IMG/VR virus record: IMGVR_UViG_3300027668_000008
Span: 124,001 to 188,000 of that record
Strand: one strand, 5' to 3'
Length of the DNA: 64,000 bases
A program made the position numbers and the translations under genes. Each line of letters starts with the position of its first letter. Position 1 is the stretch's first letter. This document shows positions 3,985 to 63,307 of this stretch, piece by piece. Under the pieces are notes generated by a model. That model was not told the origin of the DNA. It worked only from the letters and a program-made list of their open reading frames with translations, and ran no database searches.

Positions 3985-4061
3985 TGGCGCACCCTACAGG
4001 ACTCGAACCTATTACCTCTGGTTCCGCAAACCAACGCTCTATCCAGATGAGCTAAGGGTGC
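3985..4061 (-). tRNA. tRNA-Arg, anticodon GCG
   Basis: GCACCCT/AGGGTGC acceptor stem, A20, anticodon arm TTGGT-TTGCGGA-ACCAG, TTCGAGT T-loop, encoded CCA. Confidence 0.9.
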
Positions 4062-4072
4062 CTTTATAGTTT

Positions 4073-4148
4073 TGGTGGAGGATACAGGGATCGAACCTGC
4101 TACCTCCTGAATGCAAATCAGGCGCTCTCCCAGATGAGCTAATCCCCC
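4073..4148 (-). tRNA. tRNA-Ala, anticodon TGC
   Basis: GGGGGAT/ATCCTCC stem with G3:U70, arm CCTGA-TTTGCAT-TCAGG, encoded CCA. Confidence 0.95.
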
Positions 4149-4181
4149 AAAACTAAATTCTTTTTGTAACATACTAATACT

Positions 4182-4210
4182 ATAATATAACATTCAACGA
4201 GTGTTGTCAA
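4182..4210 (-). promoter_or_regulatory. sigma70-type promoter for tRNA-Ala/tRNA-Arg
   Basis: TTGACA-N17-TATTAT. Confidence 0.75.
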
Positions 4211-4222
4211 GAGCCATAAAAG

Positions 4223-4312
4223 TGGCGGAGAGACTGGGATTTGAACCCAGGAAAGAGTTGCCCCTTTGCCGGTTTAGTAAACCGGTGCTTTCAACCGCTC
4301 AGCCATCTCTCC
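4223..4312 (-). tRNA. tRNA-Ser (long variable arm), anticodon ACT
   Basis: GGAGAGA/TCTCTCC stem, G73, long variable arm AAAG-GGGCAACT-CTTT, arm CCGGT-TTACTAA-ACCGG, encoded CCA. Confidence 0.88.
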
Positions 4313-4321
4313 GGAGTATTT

Positions 4322-4525
4322 TTATTTAGGTACGATTTCAAAACACTTAACTAGTGCCTGCATATCAGTCAAACCAGCCGCTTTACATTCTGCGTATAAT
4401 TTCTTTCTAGCGCCGACTACTTCGTCTGGTGCTACTTTTATACTTTGCATCCTATTTGATTTTGCATTAGGATTCATGCCACGATATCTGGTATTATGTT
4501 TATTATTTTTGTTACGATCATTCAC
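4322..4525 (-). CDS. Small basic hypothetical protein between tRNAs
   Basis: 67-aa ORF, GTG start. Confidence 0.55.
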   Translation of the reverse strand: MNDRNKNNKHNTRYRGMNPNAKSNRMQSIKVAPDEVVGARKKLYAECKAAGLTDMQALVKCFEIVPK

Positions 4526-4541
4526 GCAATTTATTTTTCTG

Positions 4542-4617
4542 TGGTGCCGCTTCCCGGATTCGAACTGGGCACCTACTGATTACAAATCAGTTGCTCTACC
4601 AAATGAGCTAAAGCGGC
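4542..4617 (-). tRNA. tRNA-Thr, anticodon TGT
   Basis: GCCGCTT/AAGCGGC stem, arm ACTGA-TTTGTAA-TCAGT, encoded CCA. Confidence 0.95.
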
Positions 4618-20023: not shown

Positions 20024-20458
20024 TTACTTAATTTCGATTGTTTTTGGCTTCTTAGACTCTGGAATAATCTTTTCCAATGATACTGTAAGTAAACCATCTT
20101 TTAGTTCTGCACCCTGTGTTACCATATCTTCTGCAAGTGTGAACTTTCTAACAAACTGACGTTTTGAAATACCTTTATGTATTACGCCAGGTTCTGGCTC
20201 TTGCCCTTCATCTGATACTACAGATTTGATGATTAGCTCGTTTTCGATAGTTTTGACTTCAATGTCGTCTTTACCGAATCCTGCTAATGCAACTTCAATA
20301 GTATATGTAAGGTCACCTGTTTTAATGATATTGTACGGTGGGTAATTCAACTGGTTACCTGAGCTCATACGTTCGAAAGAATCGAACATCTCGTCAAAGC
20401 CGATTGTCATCGGGCGTAATTGGTTGAAAAATGATAGATTTGTTTTGTATTGTGTCAT
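20024..20458 (-). CDS. ibpA: Small heat shock protein Hsp20 (IbpA-like)
   Basis: NYPPYNII, IEVALAGF, IHKGISKRQF, LKDGLLTVSL, KPKTIEIK. Confidence 0.95.
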   Translation of the reverse strand: MTQYKTNLSFFNQLRPMTIGFDEMFDSFERMSSGNQLNYPPYNIIKTGDLTYTIEVALAGFGKDDIEVKTIENELIIKSVVSDEGQEPEPGVIHKGISKRQFVRKFTLAEDMVTQGAELKDGLLTVSLEKIIPESKKPKTIEIK

Positions 20459-20520
20459 GCTATAACTCCTTTTTTAGTAAGCAAGTTTGTTGTAATGCAA
20501 CCCTATAATTAGGCATTGCG
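20459..20520 (-). promoter_or_regulatory. ROSE-like RNA thermometer in the hsp20 5'UTR
   Basis: CTTGCTT pairs with the SD AAGGAG leaving a bulged G; upstream hairpin GCAATGCCT/AGGGTTGC. Confidence 0.7.
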
Positions 20521-20688
20521 TATAATAATATGCACTAGAACTATTTCTAATACATACTGTATTATATAGTTATTTATATTCAAAAGTCAAGTCCTTTTGG
20601 TAAAAAAACTCTATAATATGGTACTTTAAACGCACACAGACGTCATATAACGGCACTTTACAGTATATATTACTGTTTACCGTATATA

Positions 20689-26479: not shown

Positions 26480-26745
26480 ATGCAACGATTTCTGTTGCTA
26501 GGTACGTTGCCAACCCCCACGTGCTTATTTTACTAAGCCGCTAATGCCATTTCTGGCTGATAATTGTTATTTGCAATTATAAAGTTTCTTCGCGATAACG
26601 GTGCTTAGATCCCGAGAACTCCACTAACTCTAGTAATTACCTGTCGATCCTATTCATCCCCATATGAAAAATCTGTTGTATTTGGTGGAGATGCCGGGAT
26701 TCGCACCCGGGTCCAGTTTAACTTTTGAATTGCTTCAACGTTCTA
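26480..26745 (-). ncRNA. ssrA: Circularly permuted two-piece tmRNA (alphaproteobacterial type), tag ANNNYQPEMALAA
   Basis: Acceptor piece ends with T-arm and CATCTCCACCA at 26683; 21-nt spacer; coding piece starts GGGGATGAATAGGATCGAC at 26661 (G3:U70); tag ORF 26574-26533; CCTAGCAACAGAA near the 3' end. Confidence 0.93.
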
Positions 26746-26749
26746 AGTA

Positions 26750-26780
26750 TATTTATACACTATTCACTTGACTTTGTCAA
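26750..26780 (-). promoter_or_regulatory. Hybrid sigma70 / late promoter of tmRNA
   Basis: TTGACA-N17-TATAAA, where the -10 is part of TATAAATA. Confidence 0.8.
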
Positions 26781-26865
26781 CCAAATAATATACAAATAAA
26801 GTACTAATATTAAAAATAAAAGATAAGTATTCTATAAAAGCAAAATACATCAACTAAAGGTAATT

Positions 26866-61059: not shown

Positions 61060-62085
61060 TTATGCTTGGCGTGAACGAATCATTGCTAAAATGTCTTCTG
61101 CATTTTGAGATGATCCACCAGCAGGTGCACTTGGCTCAGGTGTTGCAACAGGTGTTGCTACTGCCTCAGTTTGTACAGGTGCTGATATTGGTGCCGCCGG
61201 AGTTGGTGTTGGTTCTGCAAACGGTGCCGCAGTAGGTGTTGCCACTGGTGTTGCCACTGGTGTTGCTACTGGTGCCTTGTTAGCCGATTCCGGTAATTGT
61301 ACTCCTGAAGGACGGAAGTATTGCGAATACTTCTCGGAATCATAAGCCTTACCGTCAACACTATCTTCAAACATTTGTTTGATAATGCCTAGTTCTGCTT
61401 CGTTCGGCTTCTTTGGTAAGAAGTCGTTCAAATCATACAGACCATAAGTTTCGATTGCTTTTTGTTCTTCCTCAGTTAGAGCAGTTTCTTTCCTTGCCCA
61501 GTTAGAAGTAGAATAATCTGCATATCCGCCTTTACTAGTTTTTAGTACACGGAAGTCGATACCCTTTGTATAATCAGTAGGTAATTCTTCCATATCAGGA
61601 TCCATTAAACTTGCTTTAATAATATTAAAGAGTTGTGGTCCCATAATAAACCTACGAATTGGATTCTCAGGTGCATCTTCGTCTAATGCCGAATCGCGAA
61701 CAATACCTTGGAAAACATAAGATTTCTTTTTCCAATATTTACGACCCATGTCCTCTAAAGAACTGTCTTTAAACCACGGACGTACTTCCGCTAGTATTGG
61801 ACAAGAACCTACTGGTTCCCACATTTCCATACAAGGTACTTGTACAGTAATTGGCTTACTGTCCATTTGACCTTTAATGCCATTGAACGGTAAACGAATC
61901 ATCGCTCGCTCTGCCCAAAAGAATGTGTTTTGATTGTTGGAGTCTGGAAGGAATCGCAGTGTACTACTTGTTCCTTCTGCTATGTTCCAGTGTGGATAAA
62001 TTGCGTTGTCGCCGCCGCGGTTTCCGCCTTGTGAACGGGTATCCTGTGCTTGTAGTTTTGCACGGATTTCTGCTAATGATGCCAT
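61060..62085 (-). CDS. Single-stranded DNA-binding protein (gp32-like)
   Basis: LRFLPD, VPCMEMW..CPI, RKYWKKKSY; Pro/Ala linker; EDILAMIRSR tail. Confidence 0.92.
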   Translation of the reverse strand: MASLAEIRAKLQAQDTRSQGGNRGGDNAIYPHWNIAEGTSSTLRFLPDSNNQNTFFWAERAMIRLPFNGIKGQMDSKPITVQVPCMEMWEPVGSCPILAEVRPWFKDSSLEDMGRKYWKKKSYVFQGIVRDSALDEDAPENPIRRFIMGPQLFNIIKASLMDPDMEELPTDYTKGIDFRVLKTSKGGYADYSTSNWARKETALTEEEQKAIETYGLYDLNDFLPKKPNEAELGIIKQMFEDSVDGKAYDSEKYSQYFRPSGVQLPESANKAPVATPVATPVATPTAAPFAEPTPTPAAPISAPVQTEAVATPVATPEPSAPAGGSSQNAEDILAMIRSRQA

Positions 62086-62180
62086 GTTATGTGCCTCTCT
62101 GTTGCCTAGTTAATAGCCTAGTTATGTTGTTTTAATATTGCCTTGATAGCAATGTGTACACCTTCCTGATGTACTGCTAA
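62086..62180 (-). promoter_or_regulatory. ssb 5' leader: 5' hairpin plus four AGGC motifs
   Basis: TAGCAGTACA..TGTAC..TGCTA hairpin; GCCT at 62093, 62104, 62116, 62140; promoter TTGACT-N17-TATAAT at 62183-62211. Confidence 0.6.
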
Positions 62181-62239
62181 CAATTATACTTATCTTTAAA
62201 CCCAAAGTCAACCTTTATTTTCTGAATCTAATATAATTG

Positions 62240-62462
62240 TTACAACTAACTGTTTGGAAGGACTTGCTGTGAACTCACCTCCAACTTTCTAATAGCAGAT
62301 CACATCTAATATTGCAAGGTTTCGACGTGAAATTTACTAGAACCACCGCTTCTTAAACCAACCCACTTGGGCGCCTAAAAAGATTAAGTGTGCGTTACCC
62401 CTCTGCCGAAGAGTTATTCCGCCACAAACACAAAAGAATTATAAGCCCTTTTGTTTTAGTTG
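62240..62462 (-). ncRNA. Unassigned ~220-nt structured RNA
   Basis: Own promoter TTGACT-N17-TATATT (62471-62499); no ORF; GC-richer than its flanks; multiple helices. Confidence 0.65.
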
Positions 62463-62517
62463 TTAAGTATAATATACATTAGAATGTATCCGAAGTCAAC
62501 CATTTTTTTAAATTATT

Positions 62518-62889
62518 TTATAAATCGCCGTTTTTTCGCATATTTGCACGGATTTTAGTAGCACTAATGTCGTGTATCTCTTTACCTAAGTCATGTTCTG
62601 TAATAGTATATCCTACTCCACGCCCATAACTAATGTCTACAATATTTGGAACATTGATAATATTGTACTCTTTACGATACTCGAATCCTTCGAAACTTAA
62701 TCCATTAATGATGTTTTTACGGACTGTATCAATATCAAATGGATTATCGTCTACACCCTGTACATTACGAATCATAATGCAAACTTGCCCGGTTTGTGCT
62801 AGTGCTTTTTTAAATAATGCTGTGTGGCCATCATGCCACGGTTGCCAGCGACCCAACATCTGAACTGTTGGCTTCTTACTATCAAACAT
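62518..62889 (-). CDS. Cytidyltransferase-like nucleotidyltransferase
   Basis: LGRWQPWHDGH (HxGH), ISATKIR. Confidence 0.85.
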   Translation of the reverse strand: MFDSKKPTVQMLGRWQPWHDGHTALFKKALAQTGQVCIMIRNVQGVDDNPFDIDTVRKNIINGLSFEGFEYRKEYNIINVPNIVDISYGRGVGYTITEHDLGKEIHDISATKIRANMRKNGDL

Positions 62890-63307
62890 TGTTTCTGTTC
62901 ATATAGTTTAGTATTACTTCAGATAATTGTGCGTGTGTATCGTCAAACCATTCACGTACATGGTAATTAACCTTGTTAGGCATTTGAAACATTCTGTTAG
63001 TATCCTCGTACTTGCCAATTTTAATTGTATCCATCCAAACTGTATAATCAGCATTAAACTCTTTTCTTGCTGTTTCAGTAGGACAAATAAAATCACAAAC
63101 TGCGATTTTATCAGACATAACTACTCCATCTGCTAAATGTTTCATGCGTTGTGCTTGTCTTATTCTTCCCTCAGGACTAAAATCCCAATCGTCATATTTT
63201 TTGCGTACTACATCGGCATTGATGTGTACTGCACCAATTAAGTTAGCAAATGGTTTTGCTAGTGTTGTTTTACCACTTCCAGGTAACCCAAAGATTAAAA
63301 TTTTCAT
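62882..63307 (-). CDS. Adenylylsulfate (APS) kinase-like protein
   Basis: GLPGSGKTT, NADVVR, WDFSPEGRIRQA, DFICPT. Confidence 0.85.
   Translation of the reverse strand: MKILIFGLPGSGKTTLAKPFANLIGAVHINADVVRKKYDDWDFSPEGRIRQAQRMKHLADGVVMSDKIAVCDFICPTETARKEFNADYTVWMDTIKIGKYEDTNRMFQMPNKVNYHVREWFDDTHAQLSEVILNYMNRNNV

What the first reader, a model, noticed from the sequence alone, without database searches (positions are those of the whole stretch)
62240..62499. Independent ~220-nt structured ncRNA upstream of ssb, with a loop-E-like motif
It has its own sigma70 promoter, while ssb has a separate one, and there is no ORF. Helices on the minus strand: ACAAAAG/CTTTTGT; TGTTTG/CAAACA closing; GCG-[GAATAA/GGGTAA]-CTCT-TCGGC-AGAG-CGC (S-turn/loop-E-like internal loop); CACTT/AAGTG or CCAA/TTGG alternatives; GGTT/AACC; AGAT/ATCT; TTGGAGG/CCTTCCAA enclosing GTGA/TCAC. 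I could not match it to tRNA, tmRNA, RNase P, SRP or a known ribozyme. It is a candidate new phage RNA class.
Basis: partly seen in the sequence, partly recalled or inferred. Interest (0 to 1): 0.72.

Follow-up and report, generated by a model that had tools for sequence, protein, structure and literature searches.

The report
Divergent manA-type RNA upstream of ssb
The flagged stretch is a real, conserved, transcribed 222-nt folded RNA in a marine jumbo phage, but it is a distant relative of the known "manA" phage RNA family, which was recently shown to self-assemble into cages, rather than a new RNA class.

Summary
Window 62463-62242 (minus strand) encodes a 222-nt multi-helix RNA that starts at the +1 of a sigma70-type promoter and has no ORF. 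It is more conserved than the flanking genes in five related viral contigs. Compensatory base changes support the structure there and in about 60 more distant viral homologues.

The interpretation as a new RNA class does not hold. Rfam's manA model (RF01745) matches exactly this stretch over its full length, below threshold (22.9 bits, cut-off 55.2). Homologues found with my own covariance model score 28-41 bits against manA, with E down to 3e-7. The shared parts are the 5' hairpin, the closing helix, the GAAUAA/UAA internal-loop hairpin and the 3' hairpin with an ACAG-AA loop. The peripheral helices differ.

True manA RNA in cyanophage P-HM2, and a homologue in contig L240, also lie directly upstream of gp32-type ssb genes.

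Metatranscriptome contigs begin exactly at the predicted +1 and run on into ssb. There is no terminator. So the RNA is probably a 5' leader domain of one of two ssb transcripts, not a fully independent gene.

New here are an end-clamping helix and an always-palindromic apical loop, which predicts self-pairing. Function remains unknown.

The parts
62471..62499 (-). Promoter P1 (-35 TTGACT 62499-62494, 17-nt spacer, -10 TATATT 62476-62471); predicted +1 at A 62464
   Evidence: Consensus scan. Conserved in L002 and L003. One of about 10 TTGACTT-N17-TATAAT-like sites, 9 of them on the minus strand. The metatranscriptome contig of run X16 ends exactly at 62464.
62242..62463 (-). manA-like structured RNA domain, 222 nt
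   Evidence: Rfam manA 62247-62452, 22.9 bits, full model. Own model R1 scores 280 bits here and finds a single copy in the genome. Homologues.
62456..62463 (-). P0 5' strand (ACAACUAA), pairs with 62249-62242
   Evidence: 8 bp, 100% paired in 6 sequences, 3 pairs with compensatory changes (helix 1).
62242..62249 (-). P0 3' strand (UUAGUUGU)
   Evidence: The contig of runs X17/X18 ends at 62243.
62431..62453 (-). P1 hairpin (8 bp) with a 7-nt apical loop CUUAUAA (62445-62439) that holds the palindrome UUAUAA
   Evidence: All 8 pairs show double changes across 30 sequences. The loop is palindromic in every lineage: 6 different hexamers, Fisher p = 0.002.
62425..62429 (-). Closing helix Pc, 5' strand GUUUG (pairs with 62256-62252, CAAAC)
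   Evidence: All 5 pairs show double changes, 96.6% paired (helix 2). Equivalent to the closing helix of the manA model.
62392..62422 (-). H2 hairpin with internal loop GGAAUAA / UAAC and GGCA loop (manA signature motif)
   Evidence: Aligned with high posterior to manA consensus GAAUAA...UAAgG. The inner stem covaries in relatives.
62348..62383 (-). H3, one long hairpin with tip GCCC-AAGU-GGGU. It replaces the three-hairpin H3 subdomain of canonical manA.
   Evidence: RNAalifold. The tip stem covaries across clades: GC/CG/UA.
62287..62342 (-). H4, an extended two-part hairpin. Its apical loop holds CCUUGC (62319-62314) and its 3' side holds UGUGA (62304-62300).
   Evidence: one compensatory change, several one-sided changes. 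Loop complementarity to the H5 loop.
62257..62282 (-). H5 hairpin GGAGG/CCUUC with a 16-nt loop holding UCACA and ACAGCAAG
   Evidence: Matches manA H5 and its ACAG-AA loop. The stem covaries: GGAGG, GGGGG, GUGGG, GUAGG, GCGGG.
62252..62256 (-). Closing helix Pc, 3' strand CAAAC
   Evidence: helix 2.
62183..62211 (-). Promoter P2 for ssb (TTGACT-N17-TATAAT), 31 nt downstream of the RNA
   Evidence: 11 of 12 matches. Conserved in L002 and L003.
61060..62085 (-). ssb gene (341 aa, PA5oct/Atu_ph07-type single-strand DNA-binding protein), followed by an intrinsic terminator at 61046-61022
   Evidence: tblastn gives 46-54% identity to annotated ssDNA-binding proteins of jumbo phages. Terminator.
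62518..62889 (-). Upstream 123-aa gene (HxGH-type motif, no Pfam hit). The RNA follows it in all close relatives.

Best explanation
The stretch encodes a divergent member of the manA RNA superfamily.

Transcription: the early sigma70-type promoter P1 starts transcription at about 62464 and at once produces a 222-nt domain.

Fold: helix P0 clamps the two ends. Hairpin P1 sits outside a closing helix Pc. Pc encloses a junction of four hairpins: H2 with the GGAAUAA/UAAC internal loop, H3, H4 and H5. The core (P1, Pc, H2, H5) is that of manA. H3 and H4 are remodelled and P0 is an addition.

Fate of the transcript: there is no terminator, so polymerase runs on through a second promoter P2 into ssb. 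The phage would then make two ssb messages, a long one that carries the RNA as its 5' domain and a short one from P2 that lacks it.

Inferred, not shown: the domain acts as a 5'-terminal module of early DNA-metabolism messages, affecting their stability or translation, or gathering them together. Like the manA RNAs studied by cryo-EM, it may self-associate. The predicted contacts are its self-complementary P1 loop (UUAUAA) and loop-loop pairing between H4 and H5.
For: Identity:
- Rfam manA matches the full model at 62247-62452. E is 7e-4 for the region, 0.09 for the whole window against all families, and 1e-4 for this single family in the whole genome.
- Homologues retrieved with model R1 at E 1e-8 to 1e-15 hit manA, and only manA, at the same places: 41.3, 39.8, 33.5, 30.6 and 28.2 bits, with E from 3e-7 to 3e-3.
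- The L220-type homologues keep manA's three-hairpin H3.

Structure: covariation.

Context:
- True manA in P-SSM2 also starts right after a TTGACA-N17-TATAAT promoter.
- True manA in P-HM2 lies 44 nt upstream of gp32.
- The homologue in L240 lies 57 nt upstream of a gp32-family gene.
- In about 28 contigs the RNA fills the whole leader of a DUF7307 gene: promoter, then RNA, then Shine-Dalgarno sequence and ATG.

Transcription: RNA-library contigs cover the RNA. One ends exactly at the predicted +1 (62464) and is continuous with ssb down to 61819 with no mismatches. Depth is zero at 62496-62663 in the same runs.

Self-association:
- The P1 loop holds a Watson-Crick palindrome in all 11 loop types. 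Six different hexamers occur.
- Complementarity between H4 and the H5 loop is kept at a fixed offset. It shows clear compensatory changes among true manA RNAs: CUGUA/UACAG, UUAUGU/ACAUAA, GAGUA/UACUC. In the window the pair is UGUGA/UCACA.
- manA RNAs form pentamer-based decamers and a 60-mer through kissing loops (bioRxiv 10.64898/2026.07.01.735769).
Against: - The window scores far below Rfam's gathering threshold (22.9 against 55.2 bits). Four of its five closest relatives give no manA hit at E <= 1.
- Reciprocal searches of true cyanophage manA loci with my models R1 and R2 found nothing significant. Those models are narrow, and the fixed pattern used to collect their sequences biases them.
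- The middle of the manA model (H3 subdomain, H4) is not matched in the window.
- A promoter lies between the RNA and ssb. One low-depth RNA data set (X17/X18) shows separate contigs for the RNA (62243-62517) and for ssb (61992-62162), with a gap over P2. This fits a separate or processed RNA.
- Contigs have no strand and are not transcripts. No silent control stretch could be laid.
- The loop-loop test is only suggestive (combined p = 0.024), and several lineages lack the complementarity.
- No function of any manA RNA is known.
Confidence: 0.72

Rival explanations
1. It is a stand-alone, trans-acting or architectural small RNA. In this reading P1 makes a discrete RNA of about 222 nt. Its ends are protected by helix P0, and it is released by processing or pausing at about 62242. 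It then works on its own, for example as a self-assembled multimer or cage, independently of ssb.
For: It has its own promoter, and ssb has a separate one only 31 nt downstream. P0 pairs the first and last nucleotides, as in many stable RNAs, and it covaries. The X17/X18 contig ends at 62243, and a separate ssb contig starts after P2. A third subgroup of homologues sits inside tRNA gene arrays, not in front of ORFs. manA RNAs assemble into closed particles in vitro.
Against: No terminator follows the RNA. The contigs of X15 and X16 bridge the RNA, P2 and ssb. In most lineages the RNA abuts a Shine-Dalgarno sequence and start codon. The X17/X18 evidence rests on a depth of about 5 and on contig ends.
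Confidence: 0.3
2. It is a ligand-sensing riboswitch that controls ssb. This is the original proposal for manA.
For: The junction is complex and highly conserved, with invariant unpaired nucleotides. It lies in a 5' leader in most lineages. Weinberg et al. 2010 rated manA a likely riboswitch (PMC2864571). In the DUF7307 clade the H5 3' strand CCUCC could in principle pair with the nearby GGAGG ribosome site (seen in the sequence only).
Against: In the window there is no expression platform: no terminator, and no ribosome-binding site within 150 nt. P2 would bypass any control. The downstream genes are unrelated in function to any single metabolite: ssb, gp32, DUF7307, small ORFs, and in cyanophages photosynthesis and sugar genes. 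No ligand has been found for manA since 2010.
Confidence: 0.12
3. It is an SSB-binding operator. In this reading the RNA nucleates cooperative binding of the phage SSB to its own message for translational autoregulation, as the pseudoknot does in the T4 gene 32 leader.
For: manA-type RNAs are found upstream of ssb genes three times, in three unrelated phage lineages: the window, L240 and P-HM2. T4 gp32 autoregulation through a structured leader is established knowledge (from memory, not tested here).
Against: Most family members precede genes other than ssb. The RNA lies upstream of P2, so the main ssb message would lack it. No unstructured A/U-rich tract links it to the ribosome site.
Confidence: 0.08
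4. The P1 element is a DNA palindrome that serves as an operator for a dimeric DNA-binding protein just downstream of the promoter. In that case the 'palindromic loop' is a by-product.
For: P1 plus its loop forms a near-perfect DNA inverted repeat of 22-26 bp at about +12 to +34 in every lineage.
Against: The stem sequence is not conserved between lineages and changes by RNA-type compensation that includes G-U pairs. The palindrome is offset by one nucleotide from the hairpin axis in 7-nt loops. P1 is part of the manA RNA model.
Confidence: 0.05

Closest known systems
manA RNA motif (Rfam RF01745; Weinberg et al. 2010, PMC2864571; cryo-EM preprint 10.64898/2026.07.01.735769)
   Same: Same order of elements: a 5' hairpin, a 5-bp closing helix, a hairpin with a GAAUAA/UAA internal loop, two middle hairpin domains, and a 3' hairpin with a U..ACAG.AA..U loop that abuts the closing helix. 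Both occur in marine phages, start right after a sigma70-type promoter and lie in front of genes that include gp32/ssb. Both show complementarity between the loops of the last two hairpins.
   Different: It scores 22.9 bits (cut-off 55.2). The internal loop is 4 nt shorter. H3 is one long hairpin instead of a three-hairpin subdomain. H4 is longer, and the H5 loop is 16 nt instead of 11. It has an extra terminal helix P0. Its P1 loop is a 7-nt palindrome-bearing loop instead of GACG. There is a single copy per genome. The host phage is a PA5oct/Rak2-like jumbo phage, not a T4-like cyanophage.
T4 gene 32 mRNA 5' leader (pseudoknot operator and stabilising leader)
   Same: A structured RNA upstream of a phage ssDNA-binding protein gene, on an early transcript.
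   Different: There is no sequence or fold relationship. The T4 element lies within the message about 40-70 nt from the start codon and is bound by gp32. Here a promoter separates the RNA from ssb. This comparison rests on memory and was not tested.
Large self-assembling bacterial and phage RNAs (ROOL, GOLLD, OLE)
   Same: These are orphan structured RNAs, some phage-borne and next to tRNA genes, that form symmetric RNA-only multimers. One subgroup of the present family also sits in phage tRNA arrays.
   Different: They are much larger (about 500-800 nt) and belong to unrelated Rfam families. None matched here.
HIV-1 dimerisation initiation site (palindromic kissing loop)
   Same: A hairpin whose apical loop holds a 6-nt Watson-Crick palindrome. 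The sequence varies between lineages but stays self-complementary.
   Different: It is an analogy only. Dimerisation of this RNA has not been shown.

Membership tests
manA RNA (RF01745) | Score at or above Rfam's curated gathering threshold (55.2 bits) | tested here: not met
   Window 22.9 bits. The best relatives score 41.3 and 39.8 bits. True cyanophage manA RNAs score 146-186 bits.
manA RNA (RF01745) | Statistically significant full-length alignment to the family model, with no competing family | tested here: met
   Model positions 1-192 are matched. E is 1e-4 in the own genome for this single family. Relatives reach E = 2.8e-7 and 9.2e-7 after correction for 4227 families. manA was the only family hit at these places.
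manA RNA (RF01745) | 5' hairpin followed within 1-2 nt by a 5-bp helix that closes the multi-helix junction | tested here: met
   P1 and Pc: all 13 pairs show compensatory changes across 30 sequences.
manA RNA (RF01745) | Hairpin with conserved internal loop GAAUAA (5' side) / UAA-G (3' side) | tested here: met
   GGAAUAA / UAAC at 62420-62414 and 62397-62394, aligned with posterior near 1. The loop lacks 4 nt of the consensus.
manA RNA (RF01745) | H3 subdomain: a helix enclosing three small hairpins | tested here: not met
   These positions are deleted in the window's alignment, and a single 36-nt hairpin stands there. The subdomain is present in the L220-type and L211-type homologues.
manA RNA (RF01745) | 3' hairpin with loop U-A..ACAG-AA-U directly abutting the closing helix | tested here: met
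   GGAGG-UGAguucACAGCAAgU-CCUUC, then CAAAC. The stem covaries.
manA RNA (RF01745) | Complementarity between the H4 and H5 loops (the 'pseudoknot?' of Weinberg 2010; kissing loops in the cryo-EM work) | tested here: inconclusive
   Covariation is clear among true manA RNAs. The window has UGUGA/UCACA at the same offset, and also CCUUGC/GCAAG(G). Several lineages lack the complementarity. Combined p = 0.024.
manA RNA (RF01745) | Homo-oligomerisation (pentamer-based assemblies) | not testable with these tools
   Known only from the preprint. Here it is only predicted, from the palindromic P1 loop.
manA RNA (RF01745) | Several copies (4-5) per cyanophage genome (from memory of the family description) | tested here: not met
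   One copy in the 307-kb record by Rfam manA, R1 and R2. The quick genome search also found only one copy in P-SSM2.
Riboswitch (generic) | An expression platform coupled to the aptamer (terminator, or sequestering of the ribosome-binding site) | tested here: not met
   There is no terminator-like site between 62242 and the ssb start. Promoter P2 and a 90-nt leader lie in between.
tRNA, tmRNA, RNase P, SRP, 6S, group I/II introns, known ribozymes | A match to the Rfam covariance model | tested here: not met
   No match at E <= 10 in 62050-62560 other than manA.

The most novel reading that the evidence does not exclude
The window RNA stands for a large, phage-restricted and so far unannotated branch of the manA superfamily. 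Its always-palindromic P1 loop would provide a two-fold contact. Together with H4-H5 kissing loops, this would let the RNA build closed multimers in infected cells. Because the RNA is the 5' end of early messages for ssb, gp32 and DNA-end-binding proteins, such particles would cluster or protect those messages. That would give the manA 'RNA cage' its first biological role.
Probability: 0.15. Interest if true: 0.8.

Novelty: new variant of a known kind. Interest (0 to 1): 0.45.

Why it matters
manA has been an orphan RNA since 2010 and has just become structurally prominent as the first natural RNA reported to form an icosahedral 60-mer. This work shows that the family reaches well beyond what Rfam's threshold captures:
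- It extends into jumbo phages and at least three further groups of marine viral contigs.
- It gives natural variants with remodelled peripheral helices, an end-clamping helix and a covarying self-complementary loop. These are ready-made test cases for which contacts set the oligomeric state.
- It shows a recurring genomic rule: the RNA starts at the +1 of a strong early promoter, often in front of ssDNA-binding or DNA-end-binding genes. That rule narrows the search for a function.

For annotation, the stretch should be labelled manA-like rather than novel.

Tried and rejected
- blastn of the region and of a divergent homologue against 50,697 phage records found nothing.
- 75 of 80 ssb relatives have only 25-200 nt upstream of ssb and no such RNA, so the RNA is not a general feature of this ssb family.
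- Rfam manA on the whole records of five relatives found no hit at E <= 1. This includes L002, which carries the RNA.
- Reciprocal searches of 11 true cyanophage manA loci gave only noise, both with R1 (whole RNA) and with R2 (5' half), filters off. I treat this as uninformative, because both models were built from sequences collected with a fixed pattern.
- A search for further copies in the own genome found only this one.
- The same pattern in prokaryote genomes gave 120 stretches. Of the 80 listed and checked, all are chance matches except one partial local hit.
- MFE-based extraction of H4 loops was too unstable across clades to test loop-loop pairing. A fixed-offset test gave only p = 0.024.
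- My first typed pattern had the wrong spacing (16 N instead of 14). By accident it found the first divergent homologues.

Full report
WHAT IS THERE

On the minus strand the window reads, in order:
- a 123-aa gene (62889-62518);
- a sigma70-type promoter P1 (TTGACT 62499-62494, 17-nt spacer, TATATT 62476-62471);
- about 222 nt with no ORF;
- a second promoter P2 (TTGACT 62211-62206, TATAAT 62188-62183);
- a 90-nt leader;
- a 341-aa ssDNA-binding protein gene (62085-61060) with a terminator behind it.

The window is part of a 306,714-bp IMG/VR virus record with 36% G+C. Its ssb is closest to those of PA5oct-, Atu_ph07- and GAP32-type jumbo phages, at 46-54% identity. TTGACTT-N17-TATAAT-like sites occur about 10 times in the genome, 9 of them on the minus strand, so P1 and P2 fit the phage's own promoter type.

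IS THE RNA REAL?

Conservation. Only the closest relatives carry the long spacer. Among 80 loci that encode related SSBs, two (L002, L003) have about 430 nt between the two genes and match the RNA. The others have 25-200 nt. A search through the upstream gene added L082/L083, L094 and the more distant L146. Across these the RNA stretch is 89-92% identical, while the flanking proteins are 70-84% identical.

Covariation in the close clade. The changes that do occur are compensatory:
- The terminal helix P0 reads ACAACUAA/UUAGUUGU in the window and UCAACUGC/GCAGUUGA in L146.
- The closing helix Pc reads GUUUG/CAAAC in the window and GCUUG/CAAGC in L146.
- Further compensatory changes lie in P1, H4 and H5.
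- In total 10 pairs change on both sides, against 3.4 +/- 1.3 in shuffles and 0-2 in slid controls.

A much larger family. A pattern built on the H2 motif, scanned over the viral contigs, gave 119 or more stretches. My covariance model R1 recognised full-length homologues in about 45 of the 78 listed loci, at 37-63 bits. The 5'-half model R2 recognised 14 more. On 30 distinct sequences the core helices are 97.6% paired, and 19 of 30 pairs have double changes, against 12.8 +/- 1.3 in shuffles (0 of 500) and 8-10 in slid controls. That alignment is fitted to the model. An independent MAFFT/RNAalifold run still recovers P1, H2, the H3 tip and H5, with 14 of 27 pairs covarying. Of the first 80 pattern matches listed for prokaryote genomes, none is a full family member. 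On this sample the family looks virus-specific.

WHAT IS IT?

The manA match. At curated thresholds Rfam finds nothing here. At relaxed thresholds the only match is manA (RF01745): 62247-62452, minus strand, all 192 model positions, 22.9 bits against a cut-off of 55.2. The parts aligned with high posterior are the ones that define manA:
- the 5' hairpin;
- the closing helix;
- 'UG' followed by a 2-bp stem;
- the GAAUAA internal loop with UAA opposite;
- the 3' hairpin with an ACAG-AA loop, directly followed by the closing strand.

The middle of the model is not matched. That middle consists of a three-hairpin subdomain and H4.

Transitive support. On its own this match would be a lead only. 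Of the 12 R1-positive loci scanned at relaxed thresholds (11, L211), five hit manA, and only manA, at the same places:
- L211, 41.3 bits, E = 2.8e-7;
- L220, 39.8 bits, E = 9.2e-7;
- L189, 33.5 bits;
- L217, 30.6 bits;
- L240, 28.2 bits.

The L220 type still has the three small hairpins of manA's H3. I therefore read the window RNA as the far end of a continuum: canonical cyanophage manA, then the L220/L211 type, then the L240/L201 type, then the DUF7307-leader type, then the window type.

Limits of the evidence. True manA RNAs from eleven cyanophage loci score 146-186 bits. My own models did not find them, but those models are narrow, and their key positions were fixed by the collecting pattern. 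Four close relatives of the window give no manA hit at all. Membership is therefore by transitive, sub-threshold evidence.

CONTEXT AND TRANSCRIPTION

Promoters. The manA RNA of P-SSM2 starts just after TTGACA-N17-TATAAT. The same holds for the window clade, the DUF7307 clade, L201/L242/L200 and L240. A start at the +1 of a strong host-type promoter is thus a family trait.

Downstream genes:
- In about 28 contigs the RNA is followed within 5-20 nt by AAAGGAGG and the ATG of a 191-aa DUF7307 protein. Some homologues of that protein are annotated as DNA-end protecting.
- In L240 the downstream gene is a gp32-family gene.
- In cyanophage P-HM2 true manA lies 44 nt before gp32.
- The window is therefore the third independent case of a manA-type RNA in front of an ssb gene.

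RNA libraries. Four metatranscriptome runs hold the stretch.
- In X16 a 646-nt contig (word depth 46, no mismatches) spans 61819-62464. It ends on the A that lies 7 nt after the -10 box and runs through the RNA and P2 into ssb.
- In X15 a contig spans 61819-62373.
- Both runs have zero depth at 62496-62663, so this is not even DNA background.
- X17/X18, apparently one data set filed twice, show at a depth of about 5 a contig at 62243-62517 and a separate one at 61992-62162.
- Contigs carry no strand and do not prove single molecules. The picture fits initiation at P1, no termination, and possibly some processing near 62242.

HOW IT PROBABLY WORKS

Shown:
- the fold;
- its conservation;
- its kinship to manA;
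- its presence in RNA libraries, with a 5' edge at the predicted +1;
- the absence of a terminator.

Inferred:
- The RNA is the 5' domain of the long ssb message, while P2 gives a message without it.
- No riboswitch-type expression platform exists here.

Two observations point to self-association. First, the P1 apical loop holds a Watson-Crick palindrome in every lineage, although the sequence differs: UUAUAA, UUUAUAAA, UAAUUA, UGAUCA, UUGCAA, UAGCUA, CAGCUG, and AGCU in two further loop types. A random 7-mer holds a 6-nt palindrome with probability 0.031. Composition-preserving shuffles give Fisher p = 0.002. Second, a pentamer on the 3' side of H4, 16-18 nt before H5, is complementary to the H5 loop:
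- true manA: CUGUA/UACAG, UUAUGU/ACAUAA, GAGUA/UACUC;
- L220 type: CUUGAU/AUCAAG;
- L240: AUUGG/CCAAU;
- L200: CUUGG/CCAAG;
- many DUF7307-clade members: UGUUU/AAACA;
- the window: UGUGA/UCACA.

Several lineages lack this complementarity, and the combined p is only 0.024. A 2026 preprint reports that manA RNAs assemble through kissing loops into pentamers, decamers and a 60-mer cage. The palindromic loop would supply a two-fold contact. This is a prediction, not a result.

VERDICT

The claim of a new class is not supported. The RNA is a new, structurally remodelled variant of a known but functionally orphan family. Interest is moderate. It is ordinary as an annotation, but it is useful for the open question of what manA RNAs do and how their assemblies are specified.

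Noticed in passing
window 26481-26799 (-): A permuted (two-piece, alphaproteobacterial-type) tmRNA gene in this jumbo phage: 107-113 bits against RF01849 and RF04321. It hints at an alphaproteobacterial host.
   Followed up: no
window 3988-4617 (-): A cluster of four tRNA genes (59-67 bits).
   Followed up: no
L204:4172-4237, L233:8534-8599, L193, L234, L184, L192, L230, L194, L243, L237, L256, L225: A third subgroup of the same RNA superfamily sits directly after tRNA genes inside large phage tRNA arrays, not in front of ORFs. Its 5' half scores 40-52 bits with R2. Its P1 loop is CAAU and not palindromic. It gives no Rfam manA hit at E <= 0.1. L237 also carries a tmRNA, and L194 a group I intron.
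   Followed up: partly
L245, L205, L198 and about 25 other loci (e.g. L245:5699-5916 RNA, 5698-5123 ORF): In one abundant marine phage lineage the manA-like RNA is the entire leader of a 191-aa DUF7307 (Pam3 gp33-like) gene. Homologues of that gene include a 'putative DNA ends protecting protein' and the first gene of Pelagibacter phage HTVC023P. The H5 3' strand CCUCC lies about 17 nt before the GGAGG ribosome site and could in principle mask it.
   Followed up: partly
window 62518-62889 and 62882-63307 (-): The two genes upstream of the RNA overlap by 8 nt. One encodes a 123-aa protein with an HxGH-like motif (WHDGH) and no Pfam hit. The other is a 141-aa P-loop kinase-like protein (APS_kinase/AAA_33). 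Together they may form a small nucleotide-metabolism module. The 123-aa gene is very widespread in viral contigs (about 600 matches).
   Followed up: no
window 62086-62176 (-): The 90-nt ssb leader made from P2 holds three small hairpins of its own (GUACA.../UGUAC, AUUGC.../GCAAU, CUAG.../CUAG). It could be the real translational operator of ssb.
   Followed up: no
window 62373 / run X15: In run X15 the RNA-library contig (depth 86) stops at 62373, inside the RNA between H2 and H3, and nothing covers 62374-62464. In X16 the contig reaches 62464. This is unexplained. It could be an assembly break, a strain variant, or a reverse-transcription stop at the folded core.
   Followed up: no
window 20453-20522 (-): A sub-threshold match to the ROSE_3 thermoregulator (30.6 bits, cut-off 43, E = 0.024). 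It is probably chance.
   Followed up: no
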